A stretch of 64,000 bases of DNA from Hypanus sabinus (GCF_030144855.1 NC_082725.1:10106001-10170000), one strand, 5' to 3'. Positions 2,998-63,831 are shown, numbered from the stretch's first letter. Numbers and translations: made by a program. Notes: generated by a model from the sequence alone, not told the origin.

Positions 2998-3456
2998 AAC
3001 ACAAGAGATTCTGCAGATGATGGAAATTTAGAATCAGGGCATATCACTGGCATATGTCGTGAAATTTGTTGTTTTACGAGTAACATGCACAAAATGCAGG
3101 TTAGCAGGTTAGACGGCATCTATAGAGAGGAATAAGCAGCCCACGTTTCAGGTAGAGATGCTTCATTGGGTCTGGAAAGGAAGGGTGAAGAATCCAGAAT
3201 AAGAAGGTGGGGGTGAAGGCAAGGAGTACAAGCCAGCAGGTGAGGGGGAAGTTTGTGGGTGAGGGGGAAGGGATAAAGTGAAAACCTGGGAAGTGATAGG
3301 TGGAAAAGGTAAAGGGCTAAAGAAGAAGGAATCAAATTGGAGACCGGAAATAGACCATTGGAGAAGGGTCCTGATGAAGGGTTTTGACCTGAAATGTTGT
3401 CTCTTTATTCATTTTCTGACCTGCTGAGTTCCACCAGCAATTGTGCATGTTACTCT
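2998..3456. mobile_element. Palindromic Penelope-derived element (degraded)
   Basis: Inverted arms, GA-rich spacer, CTGATGAagggttttgacctGAAAtgtt at 3371-3398. Confidence 0.65.
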
Positions 3457-5143
3457 TGTCTATTGAATCAAGTCTTTGTGTGCACTGTTGCTCTAAGGAC
3501 CTTCCACTTACATTCATTATAAGCCCTGAAGTTAAAAATAATTGCCTTTTAATTAACTTCATTGTCTTGGCTTTCTCTTCTCTACTGCCCTTTCCACCTC
3601 TTATCATTATCATGATCTCTGGCCTTTTGCAAATCCTCTCACCTTTTAGCTCTTTAGAAAGATTAAAAAGACAAAGATTAAAGATAGGCTTTATTTGTCA
3701 AGTAGTGCATAGTTTACTTCTCATCAAACCAGCATGGGTTACACTGCGCAGCCTGCAAAGGTTGTCCAGTTTCCAATGCCAACATATCATTTCCAGAACT
3801 CACTAACCCTAACAGTATGTGTTTGGAATGAGGGAGTAAACCAGAGCTTAATTTTTTAAACTTAAAACTCTGGAATTTTTTCCCCTACGTTTCACCTTGT
3901 GCTCATCTCTTTGAGGGTTCTTTTTTATAATCCCATTACCTCTCTGCCTCAACCTTCTTATATAAATTGTGCCTCTGCAAAGCCCTTGGGATAGTCTTCA
4001 TGAACGGCACTATACAAATGCAAGTTATTCTAAATGATTTTCTTAATGGTTACACTTGCAACAAAGGATTGTGATTCCTGCAACAATAACACGATTACAG
4101 TGATAAATTGGTTCCTCTGGTCAGAGTCAATGACATGCAAATTTGCAATCTGGCTCATAGAACTCTTTTAATGCACACTAGTTTAAACCCTGGAGTTACC
4201 GGCTGCTGCCTCTAGGGTATCTGCTGCAGCTATGGGATGCTGAAACTCAAGTTCTCTGCATTTACATGGAACCTTGTTTCCTTATTGCAGTTTTGCCTTT
4301 TGTTGCATGTTGCAGATGTTCCTGATAGTTGAGGTTGCAGGTTTAGATAATGTTTTGTGTATATTATACCTCTTTGCTTTTTGTTTAAAATAAAGTAACT
4401 GCTTTGGCCAGATTGGCTGTTCTTCACTGTTTCTAAACACACTTTTGCACGCTTTTGCTCACCGCTCCTTGCACACTCTCGTTCCCCCCTCACCCTTCCC
4501 TCCTCTCCCTGAAAATATTTTATGCAAAAACGAAGTTGTTGTGATATTGCAATGCTGCTGCTGTAATCTTTATACTAACTCCAATGAATTGATGCATTTT
4601 TGATTTTGAAAGCCTTCACCATCTTGTAATAGAAATTCAAGGAATATAAGAAACTGCTGACAGAACTCAATGGATCAACTTGCATTTGTGGATGCTGAGG
4701 GACAATCGGTAACAACAATGATGAAATTTTCAGGAAAAAGGAGTCCAGTTGCTTATTTACTTGTAATATAAGAAAAGCAAAGCCAGTACCACCTGATGTG
4801 TACACCACGTCTTCAAAGATTTCAGATCATAACGTCCAACATGACGTTTTCACAACCATCTGATACCAAGCCAGACACAGATGTTTCTTGTAAAAACCTC
4901 TCACTGATCTTAGACTGTAAACAAAATCATTTACTACATCATTTTACACTGAAGATATTGTGGGTGGGGTTTCAAGATCGAGGGGTGGCTCTGCATGCCA
5001 AGTGCTAACCGAATTTTTTTGTGTGCCATCTTGGACATAAGTGTGACTCATATCATAAACACGAGATTCTGCAGCTGCTGGAAATACAGAATAGCACATA
5101 CACAAATGCAGGAGGACTCAGCAAGTCTCCCCAGCAACCCTGG

Positions 5144-5209
5144 CAGGGGTTCCCAGCCTGTGGTCCCCTTGCTAACAGTCCATGGCATAAAATAGGTTGG
5201 GAACCCCTG
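5144..5209 (+). mobile_element. Tiny hAT-type MITE
   Basis: TIRs CAGGGGTTCCCAGCCT / AGGTTGGGAACCCCTG; internal ccatggcataaaa shared with other copies. Confidence 0.75.
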
Positions 5210-5364
5210 ATCTATGGAGAGGAATAAAGAGCTGATGTTTCATCAGGACAGAAGTGTCGGCTCTTTTTGACTTATCAAGAAGTTATTGTTGTTTGGGCAT
5301 CATACTGGGTTTAGTGATGGCATTGTTCAAAATTGTGTACTTGCAATAATTGGAATATGGCTTA

Positions 5365-5660
5365 GTTTAACGATTAGCATTATTTGTCACATAGACATTG
5401 AGACATACAGTGAACTGCGTTGTTTGCATCAAATCAAAGCAGTGAGGATTGTGCTGGGCAGCCTCCAAGTGTTGCCACGCTTTCAGTGCCAATATGGTAT
5501 ACCCACAGCTCACTAACCCTAAATGTACATCTTTGGATTGTGGGAGGAAACTGGAGCACCACACAGTGATGGGGAGAACATGCAAACTCCTTACAGACAG
5601 CGGCAGGAATCAAACCCCCATCTTACAGCTATTGCTAACCACAACACTACTGAACCACCC
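5365..5660 (-). mobile_element. V-SINE
   Basis: Reverse-complement V domain ctttggattgtgggaggaaactggagcacc. Confidence 0.75.
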
Positions 5661-6099
5661 CACAGTGTATAGTTTATATTGTAAATAATGTCTATTGTAT
5701 TTGTGATAAATACCACTTAAAATAATAGGCCAAAAATTGTTTTCAAGTGGATGAGAATTTTGTTAATAATATCAATCCTGTGGGATTTGTTTTCCTGGAT
5801 GTCATCAATGGTTTGCATATTCATGGTGGAACAATGTTAATCAGTATATCTCTTTTTAATACTAATTACATTTCCTGCCCATAGTTTTTTTTTAGCTATT
5901 AGCATAATAAATTGACTTCCTGGTCCTATTTGGTACAACAAGCCTTTCTATTTATAGTATTTTGTTGAGTTTTTTTTAGTTTCTCAACTATAAAGGCAAA
6001 CTACCTTTACAATTTATAAACTACCTTTCTCTTTATATACATTGTGTTTAAATTAGACCTTTTTTCTCTTGCTTTTTCATAACTCAGTGATATATAAAA

Positions 6100-8399: not shown

Positions 8400-9130
8400 A
8401 GGCCTCCTTCGTTCAGGGTCGCCATGGGTATTGTGTCCTTGTTGCCGAGGTGCACAAGCCAGGGCAGTGCAATATGGAGGGCAAGCTGTTGCCCATGTAG
8501 CAGACTACACTCTCCACACGTCTGACAAACCCAAATGAATGGCAGAGGTCGACAAGAGAAAATCTGCAGATGCCAGAAATCTGAGTAACACATACAAAAC
8601 GCTGGAGGAACTCAGCAGGCCCGAAGGATTTCAGCTCGAAACGTCGACTGTACTTTTTTTCCATAGATACTGCCCGGCCTGCTGAGTTCCTCCAGCATTT
8701 TGTGAGTGTTATTTGTCAGAGGCTGATGCAGTTTGTTAGTAGCAGCATCTCAGGAGTTGCCAGTCATCGTTAAACTCAATATAGGACTGCCTTAAAGACT
8801 CCAGCTCCAGGTTGACTTCCAAAGCCTTCCCCATGTATTGCTGCAAGGCTGTGGAGGTTTCAGATCTGAGTTTTCCTTCTCCTAAATGAGTTGCCCACAA
8901 CAGCTGATGAGCTCCATTTGCCCGAAGTGACTGGCTTTAAGGCATAGGTACCTGCCTTTGCCCTTTCTCTAGTCAGTAGAAACAGTTCTGCTGGGCTGAG
9001 TGGCTCAGCCACATGTGAAGGCCATGTGGTTGTCAGAGACTATTTGAGGCACAGGCCATTGGGAGGGAGCATTTAATAGGCAGTGGGAACTTGTCCCCAT
9101 TACCACCACTGGCTACAACAACCTTAAGGA
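8400..9130 (-). mobile_element. RTE-leader-derived non-autonomous repeat (interrupted at 8553-8712)
   Basis: Reverse-complement similarity to 31625-32155 (ttttccttctccta, cacatgtgaaggcc, catttaataggcagtggga). Confidence 0.6.
8553..8712. mobile_element. Palindromic Penelope-derived element nested in an RTE-related repeat
   Basis: gctggaggaactcagcaggcc...GAAACGTCGACTG (8638-8650)...ggcctgctgagttcctccagc. Confidence 0.7.
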
Positions 9131-11339
9131 ACCAAAATGAATAACAACTAAACAACAATTTTCACAGCACCTTAGTCAGTGATAATAATTCTGAATCTTA
9201 GTCGGACTTCAGTTTGAGAAGTTGAATGGAGCTACTGGGTACAACAAGTTTATGAACAAAACTAGAAGAAACATGATTAATTCATTGACAAGTTTAGTTG
9301 AGCAGTTAATTAATCAGACCAAATAAACATGAAGATGTAAGTGCATATTGTGAAAGTACTAAATAAAAGGAAAATTAGTTGCATATATTTGTAGGATGTT
9401 TGCATATAACAAAGGCCACTTTTCATTGTCCATATCCTAGTTATCTATTCCTGATGACCTTGAACTAATATCTTGCCAGGCTATTTCAGAGGACGCATTG
9501 CAGCCCATAGATGATGGTATATCCATAGCAGTGAGGTTATGGGTCTGCTGTGAAACCAGAGGCCACTGTGTAAGGAATAACATACTTCCTTTGCCTTGGG
9601 GATCAGTGAACTAAAATAAAAAAACAAAATGTTGAAACACTCAGAAGGTCACGCAGCACCTGTCGAAAGAAAAACAATTAATGCTTCTGATCTGGGACCC
9701 TTCATCGGAGCGTTTTCTAGTTTTCTTGCAGATTTGGATTTTTTAATAAGTGTGGTTTTATTAAGTTTAAATTGACTTAATCCTTTATAAAACCTTTTCC
9801 GGTGTAAGGTAGCACCACGGAAGATGTTCGACAGCTTACTGGGAAAATCATAAGGCAAGAGATGAGACTAAAAACATTACTTATAACTTCTTTTCTGAAG
9901 TAAATTGTGGTGAACTATCGCCACAGACAGTGAAGAGGCAGACTGAGGCAAGGCTGGTTTGGGGATGAGCCGTGCTGGGGCATTACAAGGTGCAACGTGT
10001 TCAGGCCAGGGAAGCAGGTGCGGTTTGTATTGCTGCCGGAGATGAAGTGATTGATTAGGAGAAGAGCTGACATGGAAGAATTTCAATGCCTTGTCCACCT
10101 AACCTGCGTGCAAGGTTGGATTGCTTCAAGTGCCAAGCCGATTTGGTGAGATTGAGAATGGCTTCGGTCTGGGTGGCCCAAGCATACTGCGGTGCCCGGA
10201 TCCATGTCCTGGAACTTGGCACTACTCCGTGCTTGGATAATTTAAATGCTGGCACCAATAGACTGGAAGTATGAGGCTGATTTTGGTCGCTCTCTCTCTC
10301 GAGTGTTCATTCCTTTCTCCACAGCACCGAGGCTCTGAACTGATCTGGCTGCTGTGCGTTTCTGCCCCGCTGGTGTGATGGTCCCCGCTGGGGACCGAGG
10401 CTTGGGCCTACTCCAGTTGCTCCAGGTGCAGATCTGGGACTCGGTCTCATTTGGGATGCTGTTGGCTTGCTTCTATTGTTTGCATGATGTGTGTTCTATC
10501 TCTCTTTCTCTGCGCTGTAGTTTTTGGTCATATTTTAAAATTGGGCTATTCGAGTTTCTTGCTTTGTGGGTGTCTATCAGCAGACAAATTACAAGGTGTG
10601 TAATTTATACATTCTTTGATAAATGTGCTTAGGATACTTTGGATATATTGGTATGTTTGTTTATGACCTTGTAGTTCTTTAACAAAATTCCTTTCTGTCA
10701 TCTAATTTGGTTGGTGCCTCATCACAATCACTATTCTGCAATAAAATGAAAGGTCGGGTTTTACTTTGAACATTTTGAATGTTGAAGACAAGATTTTTCT
10801 TTGGAGTAGGTATAATTATCATTAAAGTGGTTTAACTGTACGTATTACTCTACTGCAGTTTTATTTTATAACTCAGTATAAATTTATTATTAAAGACCAA
10901 GAAAGGCCGCATATTAAAAAAAACAATAGCAATGAGCTTTCAATGATTGAAATGTTTTGGGTTGAAGTATCGCTTCAGATATTTCACCACTAAACAGCCT
11001 CAACATGTTTTTGAGTGAGGTAAGGTGAGTGCCTTTAATCTAAAGATTATCTGTAGGAAACAATGTACACTGAATAGACATATCATGGTCACATCCTACT
11101 ATAATTAAGATACAAATTTGCTTCAGATAAAACAAAATTGGATCTTTTCTATGATTATGTATTTAAAATTCTACTCTATAGAATTGGCTTGCATTATCCT
11201 AGGTAGCTTTCCAGATGAGTAAGTGCTGTGTGCAATACCATTTCTGTTCTCCTAAATCTACTCTTCATCAAGACTTACAGATACTGAATTTACAATCTAG
11301 GTGCTTTTTTCAAATGGTGTTCAAAGTTTGCTCTAGCCT

Positions 11340-13400: not shown

Positions 13401-14039
13401 AGGTAAAGCATTCAGCATCAGGGTCCATAGAATTGAATTCCTCAAAATTGCTTCTACTACTTGTGCATTTAGTCAAAGAGATCAGGATTTAATTTCTATT
13501 CTTGCACATATCAAATATATGAATAACATTGACTCTGATGTATTTAGGAATTAAAAAAAAATCTTGTCAGTATTATGTTGAAAGTTGCCTGTTGGTTATT
13601 ATGTTCTCTAGATTCTTGAACATTTACAGCTAAAGAGGGTGAAAGCAATATGCCAAAGTAACACACACAAAATGCTGGAGGAACCTAGTAGGTCAGCCAG
13701 CATCTATGGAGAAGAATAAACAGTTGACATTTTGGCAAATTGCCTGAGCAAGAATTCACTTCTGTGAAGAGAACTAGGGAGTCTTGGAATAGCTTGTGGC
13801 ATGATTATCTTTAAAAATATTCATCCTTTTAATATCCCTCCCATCTCTGCAATCTCTTTCAGCCCTACTATCTTCTGAGGTGTTTGCAGTCCAGAACTGG
13901 GTTCCTGATCATCTCCATATGTAATAGCCCCACTATTGACACTCACGTCCTTTTCTCTTTTCACCAAAACTTCTCATCAAATATTTCCTTTAGACACAAT
14001 TTTACATCCATTTCATGACATTTAAATAAAAGCAGGGGC

Positions 14040-16440: not shown

Positions 16441-16737
16441 GCCCCTTATCTATGCTCCTTTGTGATTTAATGCAGCTTTCAGATCACCTCGCAGTCTCCT
16501 GCACTCCCAAGAATAAAGTCCTAGTGTGTCCAACCTCTCCCTATAATTCAGTGACGTCAGCTCCTGGTAACAACCTTGTAAATCTTTATTGTGCTCTTTA
16601 CAGTTTAATAAGGGTGGTCAAAACTGCGCAATATACTCCAACTGCAGCCTCATCAGCATCCTGGAAAACATTCCAACTTTTACATTCAGTTCTCTGACTG
16701 ATGAAGGCCATCTTGGCTAAAGCTTCCCATAACGAGT

Positions 16738-17193
16738 GAGTAAAACACACACAACATGCTTGAGGAACTCAGAAAGTCAGGCAGCATCTATGGAGAGGAA
16801 TAACCAGCTGACATTTCAGGCTGAGATCATTCATCAGGACTGGAAAGGAAGGGATAGAAGCCATAATAAGAAGGTGGCAGGAGGGAAAGGAGTACACTGG
16901 GAGGTGATAGGTGAGTCCAGGTGAGGAGAAAGGTGAGTAGGAGGGGGAAATGATGCAAGAAGCTGAGAGGTGATAGGTGGAAGAGATAAAGGGTCAAAGA
17001 AGAAGTAATCTGATAGGAGAGGATAGTCAACCATGGGAGGAAGGAGAGGCCTTATTTGAGTCAGATGAAGGGGCTCAGACTGAAATGTAAACCGTTTATT
17101 TTCCTTTATAGATGCTGTCTGACTTGTTGAGTTCTTCCAGCATTTCGTATGTGTTGTTCATGATTTCCAGCATCTGCAGAATTTCTTGTGTTT
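16738..17193. mobile_element. Palindromic Penelope-derived element with purine-rich spacer
   Basis: Same inverted arms. Minus-strand hammerhead remnant ~16805-16841, degenerate plus-strand one ~17060-17095, separated by a ~200 bp GA-rich spacer. Confidence 0.7.
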
Positions 17194-17544
17194 TCCATTA
17201 AGAGTCTTGTTAATTAATCCATCCTAATTTATCTCCATCTGGCCTCAGTCAAAAGTCTTTGCCCCAATGGAAGATTCATTTGAACTGTAAAGCACTATTT
17301 GGATAGGTAGACGGATGGTAGGGGTTTGGAGGTCTATGGTCCCAGTGCAGGTCGATGGGAGTAGGCAGTTTAAACAGCTTGGCATGGACTAGGTGGGCTG
17401 AAGGGCCTGTTTGTGTGCTGTACTTTTCTTTGACTCTTCTGTGACTTTAATTGTTTAAAAGAATCATTTCATAAGGAACCATTATTATTGAATTTACTCT
17501 GGAAGTGGAGCTCAATAGAAAGAAGAAAATTTTTTTAAAACAGT

Positions 17545-18980: not shown

Positions 18981-19039
18981 GTATTTGTTGTGTGCGCACT
19001 CTTTCTGTGAGGGTATTGTACAGTAGGTCATAAATGGAG

Positions 19040-19430
19040 ATACTACAAGTGCTGGAAATCTAGAGTAATACACACAAGATGCAGGAGGAACCCGGCAGGT
19101 CAGGCAGCAACTATGGAGAAGAATTAACTGCCCATGTTTCAGGTCGAGACCCTTCATCAGGACTGGGAAGGAAGGAGGCAGAAGCCAGAATGAGACGTGG
19201 ATGGGTGAATGGAAGGAGAAAAAACTGGCAGGTGTTAGCTGAAGCCAGGTGGGTAGGAGAAGGGGGATGAAGTGAAAAGCTGGGCGGAGGAATCTGATAG
19301 AGGAAAATGGACTGTGTGAGAAAGGAAGGAGGAGGGGCACTGGGGGGAGGTGATAGGCAGGTCAGAAGGGAGGAGGGAAGACAGAATGAGGAATGGAAAA
19401 GGAGAGAAGGGGAGGGGAGGAGGGGCGTCA
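19040..19430 (-). mobile_element. Penelope-derived 3' end (single arm plus pyrimidine-rich UTR)
   Basis: Minus strand reads cagtcCTGATGAagggtctcgacctGAAAC at 19136-19165, followed by the family arm sequence. Confidence 0.7.
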
Positions 19431-19523
19431 GTTGGAAAGCTGGGCAGAGCATTGGCAGTTGAAGTTTAATCTTAACAAGTGTGAGGTGACGATTTGGGAA
19501 ATCAAAGGTGGTTAGAACATGCA

Positions 19524-19850
19524 CGGAGTGGCCACTTTATTAGGTACACCTGTACACCTACATGTTAATTACAAATATCTAGTCAGCCAATCATGTGATA
19601 GCAACTCGATGCATAAAAGCATGCAGGCATGGTCAAGAGGTTTGGTTGTTGTCCAGATCAAGCATCAGAATGGGGAAGAAATGTGATCTAAGTGACTTTG
19701 ACCGTGGAATGGTTATTGGTGCCAGATGGGGTGGTTTGAGTATCTCAAAAACTGTTGTTCTCCTGGGATTTTCATGCACAACAGTCTCTAGAGTTTACAG
19801 AGAATGGTGTAAGAAACAGAAAATAGCTAAAAAATGTTGATGAACAGAGA
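19524..19850 (+). mobile_element. Tc1/mariner remnant (5' end and transposase N-terminus)
   Basis: MGKKCDLSDFDRGMVIGARWGGLSISKT..LLGFSCTTVSRVYREW, a Tc1-type paired-like HTH; terminus gtggccactttattaggtacac. Confidence 0.85.
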
Positions 19851-21522: not shown

Positions 21523-23692
21523 AAATTTTTCACAAAGGGGATTAATATAAGTTGGCAAAAAGGTGATCATAGAAATGCTGGGCCAAAGGCCCTGTTTCTG
21601 TGGTGTATGACTATATTAGCCAAGGTTCAAATGAGTCTCGGATTGCAGTGATTGTGACTGCAATGACTACAGTCCGCAGCCTGTAATTTTCCTTTTGGGA
21701 TTCTGTTTCTGAACCGTCCGTATGGCCTGGCTTTGTTTGTGATATTCTGAAGGATTCAGCAAACCAGATTCGCGAGAGTGCAGGTACAATCACAGCGACT
21801 ATTACTGGAGTGGACTTGGGGCTGGTCTGAAACACCGTGCTGGATTAAAGCACCGGGGCCCGGGCAGATTGATATGCTGAGCTAGATTAAAAAGATTAAG
21901 GTGCGAAGGATGATCTGCTTCTTGAGACTTTACTTGCCTCAGTGCTGAACTGACTCTGCAGCTGTGGCCTGCAGCCATTGGCACTCACCTCAGCTCTGAA
22001 CTGGCTCCATCCATGGCTATGGCCTGCAGCCATTGGGCTCCTGGACCAGTTGCAGCTCTGAATTGGCTCTGTGGTTGTAGCCTTACTTTTAGGGACTCTA
22101 TGCTTCATGTTCTTAAGATTGTTTATGTGTTTTTTATTGCACTTTTTATTTTTTATTTTTTGCATATTGGTTGTTTGGCTGTCTTTGTGATATGGGGAGT
22201 TTCATGAATTCTATTGGTGTTTCTTTGTTTTGTGCCTGTCTGCAAAAAGACGAATTTCAAATGTAATTTGACATTGACTTTGGCACTAAGAGAATTCTTT
22301 AGATCCTATCATATGCTTTTCTTATTTCTCAAGCATTTTGATAGATGAAGAAACTTTTGATTAAATGTTTTTTTTCAAAATATCCCATTAGCCCTGGTTT
22401 ATTACAAAACAGATGTGTCACAACAGCTTTGGTCATAAGGCATTGGGTTTAGGGCTATATCCCTTCCACTCAACCCACAATCTCTTTGACCCATTACCAG
22501 CAGGAAGGTGGTACAGGAGCATCAGGATTAGGACTGCCAGACTGGGTAAGAGCTTCTTTACCCAGTCTGTGAGATGAATGAATCCCCTGCCGCCTCCGAA
22601 GTTTCGGCACCAGGACAGCAAACTGCTAACTCTTTACCTGTGCTGCACACTGCATACACTTTGAATTATATTTTATTAATTGTGGTCATATTTTGTTTCT
22701 GTGCTGTGTGTGATTTGTGTATTGTGGGTGCACTGTGACCCGGAGGAATACTGTGTAGCTTGGTTGTATATGGGGACCATCAGATGACAATACACTTTAA
22801 CTTTTGGCTTCTGGTCAAGATGGCGCACCCACGGTCGACATCTTCTGGATAGACCATGGAACTATTTATTTCACCTCCTTTATGTCTTTTATGTATCGAG
22901 TGTGTTTCTGGAACTGTTGGAGCCTGTGGTTTGCAGTTTGGAGATCTTCTGGGTGATCCAGTGCTTTGCAGTCTTCGAGAGGATTCTGGGAGGCAGAGGC
23001 AGCGAGTGTGATCCTCATAGTGAGCAGGCTGAGGTACGGGCCATGAGTGGATGTTTGACTCCACTTTGCCAATTAGTGCTTCCACTGTTTGCCGAAGAAA
23101 GCGACAAGGGAGATTGAAGCATCGAGACGAAAGTGGAGGGTGTGTGCCGGCTGCCTGCCTTTGACCTGCTGCCATTCTGGAGAATGTTAGCCCGCTTTTC
23201 TGCATTTTGGATTTGGATATGATGTGGACTTGCAATCTGGACTTTTTTTCAGTCTTATAGTTTTTTCCATATTCTATGCTTCATATTCTGATCTTACTCG
23301 TCTTTTTGTATGCGCGGAAGGGGATTCAGGGGTTGATGATCACGCTACCGTTCTTTCTTGGTTCTCTGGCTATCTGGAGAAGAATAATTTCAGAGTTGTA
23401 TATTTTGATAATAAATAAACCTTTGAATAAGTTACTGGGTTTAGGGCTTCGAGCTGCTTTCTTTCTAGCTCGCAGGTGCTGCTTAGCCTTAGTAAATGCT
23501 GTAGAGAAACTGGTCCTAATTGTGTACCCAACCATGCTGTGGAATAAAGTTATTTTACCAAAATTATTGTTTTTCTTGAAAGCTACATTCAACAACTTCT
23601 GTAAGACTCATGTATTCCTTTAAAAGATGTGACCATTGAATTAGTTCTTACCCATCTGCCTCTTCCCTTTGTCCACACATCTATTTTCTTCA

Positions 23693-23843
23693 ACACATAC
23701 AACACGCAGGAGGAATGTCCTGACGAAGCGTCTCAGCCCGAAACGCTGACTGCTCGTTTCCACGGATGCTGCCTGACCTGCTGAGTTCCTCCAGTGTGTT
23801 GTACGTGTTGCTTTGACCACAGCATCTGCAGTGTACTTTGTGT
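23693..23843 (+). mobile_element. Penelope-derived element with hammerhead remnant
   Basis: CTGACGAagcgtctcagcccGAAACgctgactg at 23720-23752, followed by the family arm. Confidence 0.7.
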
Positions 23844-24705: not shown

Positions 24706-25299
24706 TACATATTTCTATTTATTTTTGTTTTTTTTTTTCTTTTTGTGTTTGCAGTTTGTTATCTTTTGCACATTGGTCTGTCTTTGTAATGTGTGATTTT
24801 TTCATTGATTCTATTGTATTTCTTCATATCTACTGTGAATGCCTGTAAGAAAATGAATCTCAAGGTGAGATATGGTTTTTTATATACACACACACTTTGA
24901 TAATAAATTTACTTTGAACGTTAAACAAGGTCCGGTGGCCTTGTTGAAATTTAAGCCTATTACTGTACTGCACACAGTTCAGCTGTAGATATATTGAGCC
25001 AGGTTTTTTAAACATAAGACAAAATATTTTCAAAGGAGCGTACCACTTTCCATGTTACCTGCACTGACCCGTTTCATTAAGCATGTCCTGCCCAATCTGT
25101 GGCACGGTCTTCAGATGTCACATCGTCCTCATTAGCTACCTCATTAGATCTGAAATGGGAGCAGGTAGTCTGCCAACGGGAGGAACTGTCTGAGAAAAAT
25201 AGTAATCACCATGTACCCTTGTTACTTCTCAGCTGTTACCTCATGTAGAGATAATAGGAAGATTCATATTCATTTTAAGCATCGGCTGTAATCCTAAGT

Positions 25300-25625
25300 A
25301 AGACACACAACGTGGTGGAAGAACTCAGCAGGTCAGGCAGCATCTATGGAGAGGAATGAACAGTTGATATTTCGGGCCGAGACCTTTCATCAGACAGGAA
25401 AAGGAGGAAGAAGGCAGAGTAAGATGGGGGGTGGGGGGGGAAGAGAAGGTGCACAAGGTGGCAGATGATAGGCGAAGGCAGCTGAGGGAGGAGATAGGTG
25501 GGTAGGGGAGGGGGAATTTCAACTGTGTATTCCTCTACATAGATGCTGACTGACCTGCTGAGTTCCTCCAGCATTTAATGTGTGTTGCTCTGGATTTACA
25601 GCAACTGCAGAATATCTTGTGTTTC
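25300..25625. mobile_element. Palindromic Penelope-derived element
   Basis: Inverted arms; minus strand CTGATGAaaggtctcggcccGAAAtatc at ~25366-25393. Confidence 0.7.
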
Positions 25626-47417: not shown

Positions 47418-47725
47418 GCACACAAAGTGCTGGAGGAACTCAGCAGGTTAGGCCGCATCTGTGGAGAGGAATACACAGTCGACGCTTTGTGCTGAGACCC
47501 TTCTGAGAGGACCATGAGACCTGAAGAAAAGTCTTGGCTCCAAACACCAACGGTTTATTTCTCTCTATCAAGGGTTCTCAACCTGGAGTCCATTGTATAG
47601 GTCCATGGCATAAAAAACGTCGTGATACCCTGTTCTCCGTACATGCTGCCTAACCTGCTGAGTTCCTCCAGCATTTTGTGTGCGTTGTTCTGATTTTCCA
47701 GCATCTACAGAATCTCTCGTGTTTA
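47418..47725. mobile_element. Palindromic Penelope-derived element interrupted by a hAT MITE (~47569-47632)
   Basis: Inverted arms gctggaggaactcagcagg / cctgctgagttcctccagc; MITE sequence inside the right arm. Confidence 0.7.
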
Positions 47726-48195: not shown

Positions 48196-48202
48196 TGTCT
48201 GT

Positions 48203-48705
48203 ATACACTCGGCAGCTGCTTTATTAGTACAGGAGTGGAATCCGGTGTGTGATCTTCTCCCATCCACCTCAAGGTTCAATGTGTCGTGCATTCAGAGATG
48301 CTCTTCTGCACACCACTGTTGTGACGTGTGGTTATTTGAGTTACTGTCACCCTCCTGTCAGCTTGAACCAATCTGGCTATTCTCCCCGGACCTCTCTCAT
48401 TAACAAGCTATTACAGCCCACAGAATTGCAGCTCACTGGATTTTTGTTTGCTTTTCACACCATTCTTTCTAAACTTTAGAGACTGTTGTGCATGAAAATC
48501 AATTCCTGAGATGCTCAAACCCTCCCGTTTGGCACCAACAATCATTCCAGGGTCAAATCCACTTAGATCACATTTCTTCCTCATTCTGATGTTTGGTCTG
48601 AGCAACAACTGAACCTCTTGACCATGTCTGCATGCGTTTATGCATTAAGTTACTGCCACATGATTAGCTGATTAGATATTTGTATTAACGGGCAGGTTTA
48701 CCAAT
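48203..48705 (-). mobile_element. Tc1/mariner remnant
   Basis: Minus strand MRKKCDLSGFDPGMIVGAKREGLSIS; degenerate terminal repeat near 48203. Confidence 0.8.
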
Positions 48706-48724
48706 ACACTTACTAAGACCATAA

Positions 48725-54356: not shown

Positions 54357-54845
54357 AAACACAAGACATTATGCAGATCCAGAGTAAGGCACACAAAACA
54401 CAGGAGAAACTCAGCTGGTCAGGCAGCATGTAGAGAAAAATAAGCAGTCAACATTTTGGGCCAAGAAGTCTTCTTTCACCTTCCTTGCCAGTTCTGATGA
54501 AGGGTCTCGACCTGAAATATCGACTGTTTATTCCTCTCCTTTAATGCTGCCTGACCTACTGAGATTCTCCAGCACTTCGTGTTTGTTTCTTCAGGTTTCT
54601 AGAAAAAAATATTTCCCTTCCCCACCGCTCTTCTTTTATTCCTATTCTGGCCTCTTACCTCTTCTCACCCGCCTATCACCTCCCCCTGGGTCCCCTCCTC
54701 CTTCCCTTTCTCCTATGGTCCGCTCTCCTATCAGATTCCAGCACTTGATCTTTCCTATCCTCTTGGTTTCACCTATCACCTTCTCACTATTCCCCTTCCC
54801 CACCTCCCCCCTTTTTATTCTGGGGTCTTCTCCCTACCTCCCTAC
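54357..54845. mobile_element. Palindromic Penelope-derived element plus adjacent pyrimidine-rich UTR fragment
   Basis: Inverted arms around the hammerhead at 54489-54526. The CT-rich tract 54610-54845 is the reverse complement of the GA-rich spacers of other copies. Confidence 0.65.
54489..54526 (+). ncRNA. Minimal type I hammerhead ribozyme motif (Penelope-like), apparently intact
   Basis: CAGTT-CTGATGA-A-GGGT(CTCG)ACCT-GAAA-T-ATC-GACTG: stem I CAGTT/GACTG, both core boxes, 4-bp stem II, palindromic ATAT stem III and AUC cleavage triplet. Confidence 0.7.
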
Positions 54846-55502
54846 CCAGGCTCTGGGTATTGAGGAGTCTGATAACTTGGGGGAAGAAACTTGCATAATT
54901 TGGTCATGAGAGCCCTAATGCTTCGGAGCCTTTTCCCATACGGCAGGAGGGAGAAGAGTTTGTATGAGGGGTGCATGGGGTCCTTCATAATGCTGTTTCC
55001 CTTGCGGATGCAGCGTGTAGTGTAAATGTCCTTGATGGCAGGAGGGGAGAGCCCGATGATCTTCTCAACTGACCTCACTATCCACTGCAGGGTCTTGCAA
55101 TCCGAGATGGTGCAATTTCTGAACCAGGCAGTGATGTAGTTACTCAGGATGCTCTGATTACAACTCCTGTAGAATGTGATGAGGATGGGCGAGTGGGAGA
55201 TGGACTTTTCTCAGCCTTCACAGAAAGTAGAGACACCACTGGGCTTTCTTTGCTATGGAGCTGGCGTTGAGGGACCAGGTGAGATTCTCTGCCAGGTGAA
55301 CACCAAGAAATTTGGTGATCTTAATGATCTCTACCGAGGAGCCGTCGATGTTCAGCGGGGAGTGGTCGCTCCATGCCCTCCTGAAGTCAACAGCCATCTC
55401 TTTTGTTTTGTTCACATTCAGAGACAGGTTGTTGGCTCTGCACCAGTCTGTCAGCTGCTGCACCTCCTCTCTGTAAGCTGACTCATTGTTCTTGCTGATG
55501 AG
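54846..55502 (-). mobile_element. Rex1/Babar-like LINE 3' fragment (relatively well preserved)
   Basis: WCRANNLSLNVNKTKEMAVDFRR..KFLGVHLAENLTWSLN..KKAQWCLYFL, then DIYTTRCIRKGNSIMKDPMHPSYKLFSLLPYGKRLRS. Confidence 0.85.
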
Positions 55503-56282
55503 GACATCTCCAGTCCTTCATGGTCATTGGATTTCTCTGTGATGGCAATGAAGTGAAGCCCTATTAATTAGGTTTGCTTTCTGCTTTGCTCAAGCTCCCT
55601 CAACAAATACCTGCAAATATTGAGATGAATGACTAATTTATCTGCACACAAAATGGTGATGGCTCAATGGAAGAATGATGACCATAGCTTTAAAAAGAAT
55701 TTCCTTTGCTGGATTTTTTCAGAGTTCAAAGTTAATTTAACATCAAAGCATGTATAAATTATACAACCTTGAGATTTGTCTCTTACGGGCAGCTACAATA
55801 CAAGAAACCCAATTGAACCCATTGGAAAAAAATCCAAAAAAACACCCAATGTGCAGAGAGAAAAAAAACACAAATTGTGCAAACAACAAAAGGAAACAAG
55901 CAGATCATACACTACCTTGAGATTCATTCTTTTGCAGGCATTTAAAGGAAAGGAGCATAATTTTATGAAAAACTGTTAACAAACTGATCGACAAACAACC
56001 AATGTGCAGAAGGTAAACTGCAAAAATATTGAGAGCCTGAGTTGTAAAGAACCCTTGAAAATGTGTCTGTAGGTCATAGGATCAGATCAGAGTTGTGGTA
56101 AATGAAGTTATCCACGCTGATTCAGGAGCCTGGTGGTTGTAGGGGGATATTGCATTGATTCATATCTTACTCAAAATATTTTATGCTTAGCAAGACCTAG
56201 TTAGCATAGTTGAGGACCAGGTTATATTGTGAGCTCATTTCGCTATCAAGAAACTTGAACTCACAACTTTAAAGCATGATAG

Positions 56283-57863: not shown

Positions 57864-57933
57864 CAGAGATTCCCAACGTAGAGTCTATGGACCCCTTGCT
57901 TAATGGTATAAAAAAAAAGGTTGGGAACCCCTG
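57864..57933 (+). mobile_element. Tiny hAT-type MITE
   Basis: cagagattcccaac...aggttgggaacccctg; same family as 5144-5209. Confidence 0.65.
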
Positions 57934-60900
57934 TGATTAAGCAAGACCATGTCTAATGTGTTTCAGCACAGATGAAGGTGAGGATATATATATTTTGGAT
58001 CAAAATTGGATAGGTCTGAGTTCTAATGTTTCAATTGTGCTTTAAACGAAAGGCTGGAATTCCAAAGCACATCAGATGTCTATTCATACTGATCATCAAA
58101 ATGTAATGCTCGGATATTACAAATTAACCAAGAAGCTAGTGAAATGAAAACCTTTACACCTCAGGCTACAATATAAAGATAATTTTTAAAAAACGGTAAA
58201 TTCTGGAAATACTGAGCAAGTTGGATATCATCTGTGGAAAGAGTAATGGAGTTAACATTTCACATCAAAGAACCTGCATCAGAATAAAATCAGTTCAGAT
58301 AAAGGGTCTTTGATCAAAATGTAATGGAATTATTACCTCAGATATACAAAGCTCAAGTACTGTGTGCCATTTGGTATATCCACTAAAGGAAAATATATTG
58401 GAAAATGTGCACCATGGAGTTCAAGTTGTAGATCATGAGGAAATATCAGATATGTAGGTTATTATTCTCTGTAATACAGAGTAGTTGCAGATTATTCAAT
58501 GGAGATTTATAGGGTTTTGGAACAGTTCGTTGAAACAAATTTTCTCAGCTATGGAACATTTAGTATGTAAAATCAGTGCCTTGTCATTTTGGTAAGCAGA
58601 CAGGAAACAGCCCTATAACAGCTCTTTCTAAAAACAATGGATGCTCACTCAATTTTGATTTTAAATATTATTTGGTGTATTTCATTGTTTTATTTTACAA
58701 AACTGAAATGATACCTGCCTTGTCAGTTTAAAGATGGATGTTTGATTTTAATCTTAATCAGTTCACCTTTATTCAATTATAACACTATACTAAATGGAAT
58801 CATGAACTCACAGTGGGTATGATAGTTCCTATGTTTGCATCTCCTTGTAACTTGACTTAGACCATTTGCAAATCTTTTGTACAGTCATTGAATTCTGGTG
58901 TTAACAGAAGAACAAAGTGAATTGTGGAAAAAGCACAAAATGCTAGAAACACTCGTCTGGTCAGGATTCACCTGTGGAAAGAGAAAGCAGTAAATGTTTC
59001 AACTTGATGACTTTACATCTTTGATTCTCATTCTCAGGTGCTGCCTGACCTGCTGAGCATTTAATGTTATTTCACCTGCTGAATTTTGCTTTTGGCAAAT
59101 TGAATTATATGTGTGATAACAAAACAAATTCTGATGTAATGATAAGATCAAAGCAGTAGCCTTGTTTGTAGCTTTAGGGCTATTTTTTTTAGTCCAATGC
59201 TGTTTTTTAACCACCCAATTAAATGTATTGTTCTGGCTTCACTTATTGTATTGTGTTTCTGAGACGATGCCGTCTTTTTCTACTCTTCCTTTTTCTTAAT
59301 TCTCTCTTCGGCATTTCTTGTTTTCACCAATCCCCCCCCCCCCCGCCCCCCCACATATATACCTCACCACCAACAAACCTGGTCCCCAGCTTCGGTGGCA
59401 CTCTATTTCTCTCTCCTGACTCTCCTCTCCACATCCTGACATCACCTGATCACTGACAGTCACATCAGTGCCCCTTTTTAAAGTTTAAAATAAATTTACT
59501 ATCAAAGCACATGTGCCACCATATACTACCCTTAGGATTCATTTTCACGCAGGCATTCACAGTAGAACGTAGAAATACAAAGGAATCAGTGAAAAGCACA
59601 ACACACACACACACACACACACACCAATGTGCAAAAGAAGACAGACTGTGTACATAAAAAAAGTAAGTAAATAATACCGAGAACATGAGTTGTCAAGCCC
59701 TTGAAAGTGAGTCCACTGGTTCTGGAATCAGTTGAGAGTTGGGAATCAGGAGCCTGATGATTGAAGGGTAATAACAGTAACTCAGACCTAGTGGAGTGGG
59801 TCCTGGGGCCCCTGCACCTCCTTCCCGACAGCAGCAGCATAGGCTGCTTGGTCAGGGTCCTTGATGGTGGATGCTGCTGTCTTGTGGCACGCTCAGTGTA
59901 ACCGAGTTAGAATAAAAGGGGAAAGATCGGGAAGCAAGGTGAGCATTGAAGAGCAAGGAAAGGTTTTTAAAAGAATAAAAATAGTAAAACCTGGGTAATG
60001 TGATGTTGTGATGAGCACTGGTGCATTTGGAATCTGAATCATGTGATGGCATGCTTCACTTCATAGACCCAGGTGTAGAACTATTCCTCTCCATACCTGT
60101 TTCCTGATTTGCTAAGTTCCTCCAGCATTTTGTGTATTGCCGTACAGACACTGGAAGGCATCAGACCACAAGACCCTACAGAGGATATTAAGAACCGTTG
60201 AGAGGATCACTGGAGTCTCCCTCTCCTCTGTTTGTGACATTTATCAGGAACAGTGAAATGCAATAGAATCAATGAAAAACTAGAAAACACACACACAAAG
60301 ACTGACAAAGAAACAATGTGCAAAAGAAGAGAAAGTGTGCAAAAAAAAGTAATACTAGAACTTGAGTTCTCAGGTAAGTGTCCTTGATGATGGATGCTGC
60401 TTACTTGTGGCAATTTTCCTTGGATATGTGTTCAGTGATGGACTGGGATGAGTCCATCACTTTTAGTAGGTTGAGCTTTGCCGCCTACTCTCTTGTGCTT
60501 TGCTGCCCTTTGTTTTCATCTTCTTCCCAGCTTAAGGGCGATAGTACATTCAGAGTTCCTGCTAGCAGGCAACCAAGTCGCATGGTTTGGAGCAAATCCA
60601 TTTGGGAATAAGATTCAATTTAGACGTACTTAATGAACAGTTACCAAGTTGGGTAGTGAACACTTAGCACTTTAAAAGAGACTGACTGAGAGAAGCCAAT
60701 GGACATATTGAATTTTTCTGTAGTTTTACAATTATTTCCCCCTTGGCCAATGTTGGATGGCAATCTTCAATACAGAAACTTGGAGCAGTTTGTATGCATT
60801 TACCAATCATTATTATTGTCTGCACCTGACAGTAAAGGATTATAAGTCCTTTGGGTGTTTAGATTCATGCAGTTCAGAAGAAGCCGTTCTTCGGAATACC

Positions 60901-61689: not shown

Positions 61690-62660
61690 AAGCAGCACGA
61701 ATGGAAAAGGCTTCAGAAAGTGATGGACACAGTCCAGCCCTTCATAAGCAAAGCCCTCCTGCCATTGAGTAGATTGTTATGGAGTCCTGCCACAAGAAAG
61801 CAGCATCCATCGTTAAAAGACCTCCACCTTTCAGGCCACGCCCTCTTCTCACTATTGTTTTCACAGGAGGTACAGGAGCCTCCAGTCACAGCACCAGGTT
61901 CAGGAAATTATCCCCTAACAATCACCAGGCTCCTGAACAGACATGGATAACTTCAGTCACCATTACACTGCAATGTACAGACTCACTTTCAAAGGCTCTA
62001 CTTGATTGTTTGTCATTCTTTGTTTACCTATGGTTTTCTTGTAGGTTCTATTGCATTTCTTTTTCTCTGTAAATGCCTGCAAGAAACTGAATCTCCAGTT
62101 AGTATATGGTAATCTGTATGTACTCTGATAATAAATGTACTTTGAGCTAACTGCGTCTAAAATTCATTGCCCTGACTCAGTTTCATTCCATCTGACATCA
62201 AAGCTCTCAATCCTGCCTTGTTATCTCCATATTCAACACTCATGTCCAAAGTTCAAAGTAAATTTATTATCAAAGTACATATATGCCACCATATACTGGG
62301 TATCCAATCAGTGTGACAGCAAACTCTGCAAATATGAAACTAAAGAAGTAATAATAATAAATAAATCAACAGTAAGTATTGAGAACATGAGATGAAGAGT
62401 CCATGAAAGTGAGTCCATAGGTTGTGGGAACATTCCAGTAATGGGGGGAGTGAAGTTATCTCCTTTGGTTCAAGAGCCCTGATGGCTCTTGATAACTGAG
62501 CCTGATAACTGTTCCTGAACCCGGTAGTGTGGATCCTGAGGCTCTTGTGCCTTCTTCCTGATGACAGCAGCGAGAAGAGAACATGTCCTGGGTGATGGGG
62601 TCCCCGATGATGGATGCCAGCTTCCTGTGACAATGTTTCATGCAGATGTGCTTAATGCTC
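61690..62660. mobile_element. Two convergent Rex1-like 3' fragments
   Basis: PHHPGHVLFSLLSSGRRHKSLRIHTTGFRNSY on -; similar on +; tactttgataataaatttactttgaac tails. Confidence 0.7.
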
Positions 62661-62927
62661 TAGCCTTTCATCCTTAAACTCTTAAGGAGCTGATTTAAAA
62701 CTCATTACCATCTTTTTAACTTTCCACCGAGTTCAATCCACCCTCATATTTATGTCTAAATCACTTCCTGGTCGTGCCATCATTTTAGGTTACTTCACAT
62801 GGCCTACAACCCCACTGAAGCCTTTTGTTTCTCCAATTTCATTTTCTCCCTCATTGTTGACAACTACACCTTCAGCTCCTCAGGTACTTCGCTCAAAACC
62901 TCTTTCTTGAAAATCAGCCGGAAAGTT

Positions 62928-62988
62928 AATGTATTAAATGTATTATCAAATGTATTATCAAATGTAATATCAAATGTATTATCAAAGT
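62928..62988. repeat. Minisatellite (AATGTATTATCA)n, about 4-5 units
   Basis: Directly visible; sits at the 3' tail end of a minus-strand retroelement. Confidence 0.85.
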
Positions 62989-63607
62989 GAGTGTATGTTA
63001 CCATATATTGCCTTGAGATTTATTTTCTTGTAGGCATTTACAGAAAAAAATGCAACAGAATCTACAAGAAAACCAGACACAAAGTAAGAATGACAAACAA
63101 CAAAGTAGAGCCCTTGAAAATGAACTTATAATTCGTAGATTCAGTTCAGAGTTGGGATGAGTAAAGCTATCCATGGTGGTTCAGGAGCCGGATGGTTGTA
63201 GAGTAGTAATTGTTCCTGAACCTGGTGGTGTGGAGCCTAAGTCCTCCTGCCTGATGGTAGTAAAGGGAAAAGCGCATGACCTGGATGGTGGATAAGTAGA
63301 CTTTGTAAGACGGAGGAAGGGACCAGAGTGGAAAATACATTGTTGAGGTTGCAAACGATTGGGTTTTAGCTGTATTCTATAAAAGGGCAAAGATCTGGAG
63401 TTTCTAGCAAATGGTGGGTTCCATTTTTCTAATGTTTATTGGAGGAAAAAGAGAGTCAACAAGGGATGAAATTTGAATGGGCATTTGGTCACTAAAGACA
63501 GGGAGCACTAAATGTGAGATGGGGAGATATTGCTGTCACCAGTATGCAGCTAAAGGTTAATTCCAGTCATTGATGATGTCACCCAGAGCAACATCAAAGA
63601 AGTAGCA

Positions 63608-63831
63608 ATGCACACAAAATGCTGGAGGAACTCAGCAGGTCAGGCAGCATCTATGGAAATAAATAAACATTTGGCATTTTAGGCCAAGACCCTTTATCAG
63701 GACCCTGATGAAGAGGCTCAGCCCGAAGCATCGACTGTTTATTCATTTCCATAGATGCTGCCTGACATGCTGAGTTCCTCCAGCAGTTTGTATGTGTTGC
63801 TCAGGATTTCCTGCATCTGCAGAATCTCTTG
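63608..63831. mobile_element. Palindromic Penelope-derived mini-element (two inverted pseudo-LTR arms with hammerhead remnants)
   Basis: cacacaaaatgctggaggaactcagcaggtcaggcagcatctatggaaat... is mirrored by ...atttccatagatgctgcctgacatgctgagttcctccagcagtttgtatgtg. Centre is atcaggaccctgat, with CTGATGA at 63705. Confidence 0.75.

What the first reader, a model, noticed from the sequence alone, without database searches (positions are those of the whole stretch)
2998..63831. Dispersed family of short palindromic elements with a minimal hammerhead ribozyme at the inner end of each arm
Seen: at least nine clear copies (2998, 8553, 16738, 19040, 23693, 25300, 47418, 54357, 63608) plus older relics (~4630, 5060, 9625, 13660, 58195, 58935, 60060) share a ~110-130 bp arm, usually as an inverted pair. 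Aligning the inner ends by eye gives CAGTC-CTGATGA-A-GGGTCTCG(A/G)CCC-GAAAC-GTC-GACTG. That is stem I (CAGTC/GACTG), both hammerhead core boxes, a short stem II, a palindromic ACGT stem III and a GUC cleavage triplet. Established: this minimal type I hammerhead, which cleaves as a dimer, is characteristic of Penelope-like element pseudo-LTRs, and those elements often form inverted 5' repeats. Inference: these non-coding 150-450 bp fold-backs are non-autonomous, ribozyme-bearing Penelope derivatives (retrozyme-like). An intact copy would yield a sense ribozyme whichever strand is transcribed. They are easily mistaken for MITEs.
Basis: partly seen in the sequence, partly recalled or inferred. 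Interest (0 to 1): 0.85.

Follow-up and report, generated by a model that had tools for sequence, protein, structure and literature searches.

The report
Decayed Penelope-type hammerhead retroposon copies
The window holds about sixteen old, mostly broken insertions of the hammerhead-carrying end module of a Penelope-like retroelement, often as back-to-back inverted pairs, which is a known and common feature of such elements in vertebrate genomes.

Summary
The repeat family is real. A profile search finds 25 arms at about 16 loci, covering all nine "clear" copies and six of the seven "relics"; about 4630 is not supported.

Only one arm (54489-54526) still meets a minimal-hammerhead descriptor. 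The rest are decayed, mostly at CpGs. Rfam hammerhead models match nothing, and stems I and II show no covariation beyond shuffles.

Three features argue against a DNA-transposon MITE and for Penelope-like element (PLE) retroposition:
- In 7 of 7 inverted pairs, only one arm reaches the sharp distal end (...CTGCAGAATCTCTTGTGTTT). The other stops 20-45 nt short, which is the published PLE "tail" asymmetry.
- Target-site duplications vary in length: 15, 12 and 12 bp.
- Central junctions differ from locus to locus, and single 5'-truncated arms also occur.

The fold-backs were therefore most likely formed at insertion, by priming from both target strands.

No RT or GIY-YIG ORF lies in the window, so "non-autonomous" remains open. 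"Retrozyme-like" is not supported, because there are no tandem hammerhead arrays.

Fold-back RNA is predicted to bury the ribozyme in a roughly 100-bp hairpin.

First readers of this scan noted the same family many times elsewhere in this genome. It is a known kind of element and of low interest.

The parts
2998..3455 (-). Inverted-pair insertion E1. Arm with the full distal end lies at 2998-3169 (minus strand; it carries a ~42-nt internal insertion). The CT-rich upstream region (GA-rich on +) is 3170-3367. The inverted arm 3368-3455 (+) starts at GTC and lacks the distal end.
5045..5245 (-). Single arm E10, starting at GTCCTGATGA. Helix II is deleted. An unrelated small MITE is inserted at 5144-5209. 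The distal end is present, followed by about 12 extra nt. Candidate TSD ACACTT(A/C)TGTCC at 5033-5044 and 5246-5257.
8553..8713 (-). Inverted pair E2. The arm with the distal end is 8553-8623 (minus), internally truncated. The arm without it is 8624-8713 (+). The 9-bp flank repeat at 8540-8548 / 8714-8722 is not significant on its own.
9624..9708 (-). Old single-arm relic.
13656..13735 (-). Single 5'-truncated arm without the distal end.
16738..17191 (+). Inverted pair E3. Inverted arm without the distal end is 16738-16840; it continues into the CT-rich region (GA-rich on +) to about 17045. The arm with the full distal end runs from about 17046 to 17191. Possible 14-bp TSD with 3 mismatches at 16724-16737 / 17192-17205.
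19030..19420 (-). Longest single copy (long form): about 250 nt of CT-rich region, then CAGTC-hammerhead (G at the cleavage position, so dead), arm and a decayed distal end. The 5' limit near 19418 matches the start of the 54614 segment. Contig depth in four runs also drops there.
23693..23843 (+). E5. A 23-nt inverted fragment (23693-23715) is joined to an arm that starts at GTCCTGACGA and runs to the distal end. Perfect 15-bp TSD CATCTATTTTCTTCA at 23678-23692 and 23844-23858. Contigs from two runs under other organism codes, about 1-3% diverged at this locus, span its left junction.
25290..25621 (+). Inverted pair E6. The inverted arm 25290-25393 continues into CT-rich sequence to about 25494. 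The right arm 25515-25621 lacks the hammerhead and has the full distal end. The left outer limit is uncertain (25278-25290).
47418..47720 (+). Inverted pair E7. The arm without the distal end is 47418-47510. The arm with it is 47514-47720, interrupted by a MITE-like insert starting at 47569.
54357..54849 (.). E8. Arm with the distal end at 54357-54470 (minus). On the plus strand, 24 nt of CT-rich sequence, the hammerhead and the arm occupy 54470-54602. After 11 nt, a CT-rich segment follows at 54614-54849 and ends at ...CCCAG. Together this is more than one unit of a ~378-nt tandem or circular template.
54489..54526 (+). The only arm that still meets the full minimal-hammerhead descriptor: CAGTT CTGATGA A GGGTCTCGACCT GAAAT ATC GACTG.
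   Evidence: No Rfam hammerhead match even at E<=10.
58198..58330 (.). Old inverted-pair relic whose junction lies near GTC.
58928..59058 (.). Old inverted-pair relic.
60081..60136 (+). Arm fragment relic.
63606..63837 (+). Short fold-back E9. The arm without the distal end is 63606-63703 (minus sense). The arm with it is 63704-63837. The arms meet at GGAC|C|CTGATGA. TSD TCAAAGAAG(T/C)AG at 63594-63605 and 63838-63849.

Best explanation
These are dead copies of the 3'-terminal module of a Penelope-like retroelement lineage. In RNA sense the module reads: optional CT-rich leader, a minimal type I hammerhead, about 65 nt, a diffuse proximal start zone for reverse transcription, about 35 nt of 'tail', and a sharp distal end ...CTTGTGTTT.

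Proposed mechanism. Copies arose by target-primed reverse transcription at staggered nicks 12-15 bp apart. When only one nick primed, a single 5'-truncated arm resulted. When both target strands primed on two RNA copies, two converging cDNAs were joined in the middle. That gives an inverted pair with a locus-specific junction. In every pair, one arm started at the distal site and the other in the proximal zone.

The hammerhead is a passenger that worked, if at all, in the source element's transcript. Published work indicates this needs dimerisation and probably the element's protein. In this window the copies are decaying neutrally.

Shown: the family, its anatomy, the end asymmetry, the TSDs, the decay and its abundance in related genomes.
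Inferred: PLE enzymology, two-strand priming, and any ribozyme activity.
For: - Family and anatomy.
- One-sided distal extension in 7/7 pairs: E1, E2, E3, E6, E7, E8 and E9. This matches the 30-40 bp 'tail', often present at only one end of PLE insertions, and the inverted 5'-truncated copies described by Craig et al. 2021 (PMC8557442). It also matches the two internal RT start sites, with cleavage and extension of both DNA strands, shown for an Anolis PLE (Frangieh et al. 2024, PMC11167929).
- TSDs: flank repeats of 15/15, 11/12 and 11/12 bp. The chance of 11 or more matches at a random pseudo-element is 0.012.
- Junctions differ between loci, and single arms exist.
- The consensus hammerhead has the traits that Cervera & De la Pena 2014 (PMC4209133) report for metazoan PLE minimal hammerheads. 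That paper also reports dual motifs 100-700 bp apart on opposite strands.
- One intact motif against 0.005 expected by chance.
- Summed contig depth over the arms is roughly 1e5-fold that of unique flanks in four runs from four coded organisms, and the loose ends next to the arm ends are A/T-rich.
- No tRNA gene and no 7SL or 5S match that would suggest a classical SINE head.
Against: - No RT or GIY-YIG ORF is in the window (Pfam scan of 149 open segments of 73 aa or more). The link to a PLE enzyme therefore rests on insertion signatures and the motif, not on a linked ORF.
- Rfam hammerhead models give no match.
- No covariation: 62.7% of cells are paired against 63.0% in shuffles.
- The proximal ends are spread over about 25-30 nt rather than falling at one site. 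For E6 and E8 the 'short' arm may include part of the tail.
- Only three TSDs are individually convincing.
- All three frames downstream of the hammerhead are closed in the consensus, unlike the Anolis element, whose ORF starts in the hammerhead (read directly from the consensus).
Confidence: 0.8

Rival explanations
1. A discrete non-autonomous family. On this reading a ~380-440 nt non-coding unit (CT-rich body plus hammerhead arm), and/or a ~100/135-nt mini-unit starting at GTCCTGATGA, is transcribed from its own master copies and mobilised in trans by PLE proteins. This refines the best explanation rather than replacing it.
For: - The CT-rich region gives no Pfam hit at E<=0.01 (the open segments over 3123-3408, 16772-17157 and 18981-19536 were in the set scanned).
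- The long form has a defined 5' limit. The 19040 copy and the 54614 segment both start at the same reference position, and contig depth drops about 100-fold there.
- Six or so arms end at the same GTC, 3 nt before CTGATGA.
- All frames after the hammerhead are closed in the consensus.
- Li et al. 2026 (bioRxiv 10.64898/2026.07.22.740005) argue that vertebrate hammerhead repeats are non-autonomous PLE derivatives.
Against: The window offers no autonomous element for comparison. A PLE with a long CT-rich untranslated pseudo-LTR would look the same after heavy 5' truncation. Contig depth from read laying is explicitly not a copy number. Only two copies define the 5' limit.
Confidence: 0.5
2. Simply extreme 5'-truncated or inverted insertions of an autonomous Penelope-like element, with no separate non-autonomous lineage.
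For: PLE insertions are typically highly 5'-truncated, with inverted copies and tails. Unchecked first-reader notes of this scan report GIY-YIG fragments flanked by the same kind of hammerhead arms elsewhere in this genome.
Against: About 250 nt upstream of the hammerhead is CT-rich low-complexity sequence, not recognisable endonuclease coding sequence. The recurrent 5' ends also argue against random truncation.
Confidence: 0.35
3. A SINE mobilised by a LINE, with inversions from twin priming, and a hammerhead-like motif that is either coincidental or unrelated to its mobility.
For: Variable TSDs and 5' truncation or inversion also occur with LINE machinery. A weak RVT_1-bearing LINE fragment is present in the window.
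Against: There is no poly(A) or microsatellite tail, no tRNA, 7SL or 5S head, and no arm-free copy of the 3' end next to a LINE ORF in the window. Twin priming inverts without duplicating about 100 nt. The one-sided 20-45 nt extension is described as specific to PLEs. The full minimal-hammerhead architecture in the consensus is very unlikely by chance.
Confidence: 0.05
4. A MITE: a non-autonomous DNA transposon with terminal inverted repeats.
For: The palindromic look and small size.
Against: The ends are unequal in all 7 pairs. TSDs are 12 to 15 bp and not of fixed length. Centres vary, and single arms have their own TSD. A true MITE family in the same window (TIR CAGGGGTTCCCAACCT) looks quite different.
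Confidence: 0.03

Closest known systems
Minimal hammerhead ribozymes of metazoan Penelope-like elements (Cervera & De la Pena 2014, Mol Biol Evol, PMC4209133)
   Same: Type I topology with no loop 3 and a palindromic A-C-G-U in place of helix III. Helix I is 5 bp. There is an extra unpaired base between A9 and 10.1, and a G10.1-C11.1 pair. The motifs are massively dispersed and mostly solitary, and some occur as pairs on opposite strands 100-700 bp apart.
   Different: Helix II is only 4-5 bp here, against 7-8 bp in the Schistosoma families and 6 bp in the Drosophila variant that the paper describes. No flanking PLE ORF was seen in this window. Activity was not tested.
PLE insertion architecture: pseudo-LTRs, inverted 5'-truncated copies and a 30-40 bp 'tail' (Craig et al. 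2021, PMC8557442; Frangieh et al. 2024, PMC11167929)
   Same: Inverted arms, one partial tandem, an extension at only one end, two alternative 3' termini 65-72 and about 105 nt downstream of the hammerhead cut site, and A/T-rich flanks.
   Different: The proximal terminus is a 25-30 nt zone rather than a point. In vitro, the Anolis enzyme showed no difference in start site between top and bottom strands, whereas here every pair is mixed. The RNA around the start sites is GU-rich, not AC-rich. No ORF starts in the hammerhead.
Metazoan non-LTR retrozymes (Cervera & De la Pena 2020, PMC7229834; Li et al. 2026 preprint)
   Same: Non-coding units of a few hundred nt bearing a type I hammerhead, proposed to derive from PLE pseudo-LTRs. 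Solitary 'monomers' are dispersed.
   Different: Retrozymes are defined by head-to-tail arrays and circular RNA, and usually by a canonical hammerhead with a short helix III. The window has inverted pairs and single arms, no array, and a loop-less minimal motif.
L1 twin-priming inversions
   Same: An inverted 5' segment inside one TSD, created at insertion.
   Different: Twin priming uses one RNA and gives inversion with little overlap. Here both arms copy the same ~100 nt, which implies two templates.

Membership tests
PLE minimal hammerhead (Cervera & De la Pena 2014) | Core boxes CUGAUGA and GAAA, with a non-G base at the cleavage position after U16.1 | tested here: met
   Met in the majority consensus and in one genomic copy, 54489-54526. 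Five arms keep both boxes exactly; the other arms are mutated.
PLE minimal hammerhead (Cervera & De la Pena 2014) | Helix I of 4-5 bp | tested here: met
   CAGTC/GACTG in the consensus. It is present only in the five arms that continue into the CT-rich region. Arms that start at GTC have 3 bp or fewer.
PLE minimal hammerhead (Cervera & De la Pena 2014) | Unpaired nucleotide between A9 and 10.1, and a G10.1-C11.1 pair | tested here: met
   CTGATGA-A-GGG...CCC-GAAA in the consensus and in most arms.
PLE minimal hammerhead (Cervera & De la Pena 2014) | No loop 3; palindromic 15.2-16.2, so that two copies can build helix III | tested here: met
   A-C-G-T in the CpG-restored consensus and A-T-A-T in the intact copy.
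PLE minimal hammerhead (Cervera & De la Pena 2014) | Compensatory changes within consensus families | tested here: inconclusive
   62.7% of cells are paired against 63.0% in shuffles, with no excess of double changes. The 17 copies are neutrally decaying pseudocopies, so this is a weak test.
PLE minimal hammerhead (Cervera & De la Pena 2014) | Location in the flanking repeat of an RT + GIY-YIG element | not testable with these tools
   No such ORF lies in the window and the rest of the genome is not readable here. Unchecked scan notes claim such cases elsewhere.
PLE minimal hammerhead (Cervera & De la Pena 2014) | Self-cleavage as a dimer | not testable with these tools
   Thermodynamics alone do not favour the double-hammerhead fold: -19.9 kcal/mol against a dimer MFE of -33.7. 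The runs found are contigs, so RNA ends cannot be read.
Rfam hammerhead families (Hammerhead_1, _3, _II, HH9, HH10) | Score at or near the gathering threshold of a curated covariance model | tested here: not met
   No hammerhead match at gathering threshold or at E<=10, for the whole window or for the intact copy alone. This is expected for a motif without helix III.
Penelope-like element insertion | A 30-40 bp tail present at one end only | tested here: met
   In 7/7 inverted pairs one arm ends at ...CTTGTGTTT and the other ends 20-45 nt short.
Penelope-like element insertion | Inverted 5'-truncated copy and/or partial tandem | tested here: met
   About ten inverted loci and one partial tandem at 54470-54849.
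Penelope-like element insertion | TSD of variable length | tested here: met
   15, 12 and 12 bp. Chance P is 0.012 or less for each. Older copies are uninformative.
Non-LTR retrozyme | Head-to-tail array with a hammerhead in every unit | tested here: not met
   There are no two same-strand hammerhead arms one unit apart. The only partial tandem lacks a second hammerhead.
Non-LTR retrozyme | Circular RNA product | not testable with these tools
   No RNA run on record holds the locus, and only contigs were available.
MITE / DNA transposon | Two complete terminal inverted repeats and a fixed-length TSD | tested here: not met
   Ends are unequal in 7/7 pairs, and TSDs range from 12 to 15 bp.

The most novel reading that the evidence does not exclude
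Each fold-back may be a fossil of one concerted insertion, in which a dimeric PLE RT-endonuclease primed on both target strands. One protomer would start at the distal site and the other in the proximal zone (7/7 mixed pairs). The usual template would be a discrete short RNA that begins 3 nt before CUGAUGA, right after a polypyrimidine-CAG junction. That would be in vivo evidence for, and an asymmetry not seen in, the in vitro PLE mechanism. It would also point to a defined transcription or processing start at the hammerhead.
Probability: 0.3. Interest if true: 0.5.

Novelty: new member of a known kind. Interest (0 to 1): 0.22.

Why it matters
As a feature of this window it matters little. Dispersed, decayed minimal hammerheads in Penelope terminal repeats, including opposite-strand pairs, have been described in fishes, coelacanth, amphibians and reptiles since 2014. 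First readers of this scan flagged the same family hundreds of times elsewhere in this genome.

It has two practical uses:
- Annotation. These fold-backs should be filed as PLE-type retroposon fragments, not as MITEs or as active ribozymes.
- Mechanism. A genome this rich in short, TSD-bounded inverted pairs is good material for a genome-wide test of how PLEs insert: two start sites, priming from both strands, and the position of the RNA 5' end.

Tried and rejected
- Rfam at the gathering threshold and at E<=10, on the whole window and on the intact copy alone: no hammerhead family matched.
- Covariation count on stems I and II: no signal above shuffles.
- RNAalifold on the tail region of eight arms: weak consensus (-4.65 kcal/mol) and no real covariation, so no support for a conserved stem-loop at the start sites.
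- Pfam on 149 open segments: no GIY-YIG. There was one weak RVT_1 plus ALKBH8_N (probably a LINE fragment), a hAT dimerisation domain, a zinc finger, and NAD_binding_2, which is probably a host exon.
- An automatic CpG-restoring consensus over-corrected (for example CTGACGA) and was dropped in favour of the majority consensus.
- Sequencing runs: all holders are Logan contigs and none is on record as RNA, so expression, cleavage ends and circular forms could not be examined.
- Laying contigs of four coded runs: no empty site was found. Contigs from runs under other organism codes span the E5 and E6 junctions.
- The supplement of Cervera 2014 is not held, so no direct sequence comparison with published fish PLE hammerheads was possible.
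- A Pol III SINE reading (A/B boxes, T-run terminator) and a transcription-start or 3' splice-site reading of the recurrent GTC 5' end were considered by eye only. Neither could be tested.

Full report
**Observation**

A blastn search with the copy at 63608-63832 hits both strands at about 15 places. Three rounds of nhmmer give 25 arm matches, with E-values from 1e-4 to 1e-28, at about 16 loci. Six of the seven relics are recovered too: 5060, 9625, 13660, 58195, 58935 and 60060. The one near 4630 resembles the arm by eye only.

The window is CpG-poor. One of its open segments carries a dehydrogenase NAD-binding domain, which agrees with scan notes that place the window in a HIBADH intron.

**The motif**

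The majority consensus of 17 sense-oriented arms is CAGTC CTGATGA A GGGTCTCGGCCC GAAATGTC GACTG. At the T of GAAAT the copies show ACG, ATG and ACA, which is the signature of a decayed CpG. Loose-end consensus from four public runs reads CCCGAAACATCGACTG and, on the other strand, CAACGTTTCGGGCCGAGACCCTTCATCAGG.

It has the traits listed for metazoan PLE minimal hammerheads (PMC4209133):
- a helix I of 5 bp;
- an extra unpaired base after A9;
- a G10.1-C11.1 pair;
- no loop 3, and a palindromic ACGU that can form helix III only between two copies.

The individual copies, however, are wrecks. Five arms keep exact CTGATGA...GAAA. Only 54489-54526 passes a full descriptor, against 0.005 expected per window. 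The motif holds four CpGs, which explains the fast decay.

Rfam's hammerhead models match nothing at gathering score or at E<=10, even on the intact copy alone. A pair count on stems I and II gives 62.7% paired against 63.0% in shuffles. The structure is thus a property of the ancestral sequence. Within this window there is no evidence of selection on it.

The 5' strand of stem I exists only in the five arms that continue into a CT-rich upstream region. Arms that meet head-to-head stop at GTC.

**Anatomy**

In RNA sense the full module has three parts:
- a CT-rich leader of about 250 nt;
- CAGTC, the hammerhead and about 65 nt ending in ...CATTTTGTGTGTGTT(GCT);
- about 35 nt more, ending sharply in ...CTGCAGAATCTCTTGTGTTT.

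In all seven well-preserved inverted pairs (E1, E2, E3, E6, E7, E8, E9), one arm reaches the distal end and the other stops 20-45 nt short. No pair has two long or two short ends. The short ends are spread over about 25-30 nt.

Three elements have flank repeats of 15/15, 11/12 and 11/12 bp exactly at these ends: 23678-92 / 23844-58, 63594-605 / 63838-49, and 5033-44 / 5246-57. At random pseudo-elements, 11 or more matches occur with P = 0.012.

The central junctions differ from locus to locus. Three kinds occur:
- two arms meeting near GTC (E9, E7, the 58198 relic);
- a 23-nt inverted scrap joined to a full arm (E5);
- arms joined through 100-200 nt of leader (E1, E3, E6).

Single arms also occur: 5045-5245, 13656-13735, 9624-9708, and the long copy at 19030-19420.

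**What it is**

Unequal ends, TSDs of variable length and unique centres rule out a terminal-inverted-repeat DNA transposon. They match what is published for Penelope-like elements. Craig et al. describe high 5' truncation, partial tandems, an adjacent inverted 5'-truncated copy, and a 30-40 bp tail often present at one end only (PMC8557442). Frangieh et al. show that an Anolis PLE protein cleaves and extends both DNA strands. It starts reverse transcription at two internal sites of the RNA whose spacing is the tail, roughly 85-90 nt downstream of a protein-assisted hammerhead (PMC11167929). Here the two kinds of end lie 65-72 nt and about 105 nt downstream of the GUC site.

The simplest reading is that each fold-back was made at insertion. 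Two cDNAs primed from the two staggered nicks on two RNA copies, ran inward and were joined. Because both arms copy the same ~100 nt, one-template twin priming as in L1 does not fit.

**What is not shown**

No RT or GIY-YIG ORF is in the window (Pfam on 149 open segments). Whether this is a separate non-autonomous lineage or the truncated end of an autonomous element therefore stays open.

In favour of a discrete unit:
- the leader gives no Pfam hit;
- two copies begin at the same leader position, where contig depth in four runs also collapses;
- 54470-54849 reads as slightly more than one turn of a ~378-nt tandem or circular template;
- all three frames close within 70 nt of the hammerhead.

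Against: unchecked first-reader notes report GIY-YIG fragments between similar arms elsewhere in this genome.

"Retrozyme-like" is not supported. There is no head-to-tail array, and the motif is the loop-less minimal type.

**Function**

Whole fold-backs are predicted to fold into a hairpin of about 100 bp (-133 kcal/mol on either strand). This pairs the sense hammerhead with its antisense twin. For the bare consensus, the double-hammerhead conformation is -19.9 kcal/mol, against -33.7 for the best dimer and -12.7 per monomer.

Published work points the same way. It reports low in vitro activity as dimers and dependence on the element's protein in Anolis. A lone intact copy in an intron is therefore unlikely to cut its host transcript.

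The runs that hold this DNA are contigs, and none is on record as RNA, so ends and circles could not be read.

**Age and abundance**

The two arms of E9 are 80% identical. Contigs from runs under other organism codes, about 1-3% diverged at these loci, span the E5 and E6 junctions. Summed contig depth over the arms is about 1e5 times that of unique flanks in four runs. This is not a copy number, but it marks the family as one of the commonest repeats. Sequence next to the arm ends in other copies is A/T-rich.

**Unexplained**

Six or so arms end at the same GTC, 3 nt before CTGATGA, and the free-standing leader segment at 54614-54849 ends at the same ...CCCAG. This suggests a discrete RNA 5' end or a strong RT stop. 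The leader's polypyrimidine tract plus CAG looks like a 3' splice site. In Drosophila virilis Penelope, an intron ends at the 5' edge of helix I. I could not test this.

**Verdict**

This is a real family, correctly recognised as Penelope-derived and not a MITE. It is a known kind of element in a decayed state. The claims of present ribozyme function and retrozyme character go beyond the evidence. First readers of this scan noted the same family many times on other pieces of this genome.

Noticed in passing
window 5144-5209, 57864-57933, 47569-47632; single ends at 33975, 43186, 43607, 46642: A separate small palindromic MITE family with terminal repeat CAGGGGTTCCCAACCT: 9 matches against 0.5 expected. 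Two copies sit inside Penelope-type arms at nearly the same arm position (after ...CTCCATAGAT). This suggests either a hot spot or a subfamily that spread after the insertion.
   Followed up: partly
window 44078-45522 (-): Two adjacent long open frames (374 and 138 aa) with a weak hAT C-terminal dimerisation domain and a Spin-doc type C2H2 zinc finger. This is a hAT-like transposase remnant or a domesticated gene.
   Followed up: partly
window 19517-19823, 26269-26571, 48449-48701: Another abundant repeat of about 300 bp with 80-82% identity between copies. It lies directly beside the long Penelope-type copy, and its contig depth in related genomes is as high as that of the arms.
   Followed up: no
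window 3368, 5242, 23716, 47510, 54849, 58285, 63703: The inner ends of many arms, and the end of a free-standing CT-rich segment, coincide at the CAG/GTC junction 3 nt upstream of CTGATGA. The upstream polypyrimidine tract plus CAG resembles a 3' splice site.
   Followed up: partly
window 54850-55520 (-): Coding-like sequence next to the CT-rich segment. One open segment somewhere in the window gives weak RVT_1 and ALKBH8_N hits, probably from a LINE fragment; I did not locate which segment. It may have cut off the partial tandem at 54849.
   Followed up: no
window 5045-5056 and 25622-25632: Two copies may carry 11-12 extra nucleotides between the canonical distal end (GTGTTT) and the candidate TSD. 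These could be untemplated filler or read-through of the source locus.
   Followed up: no
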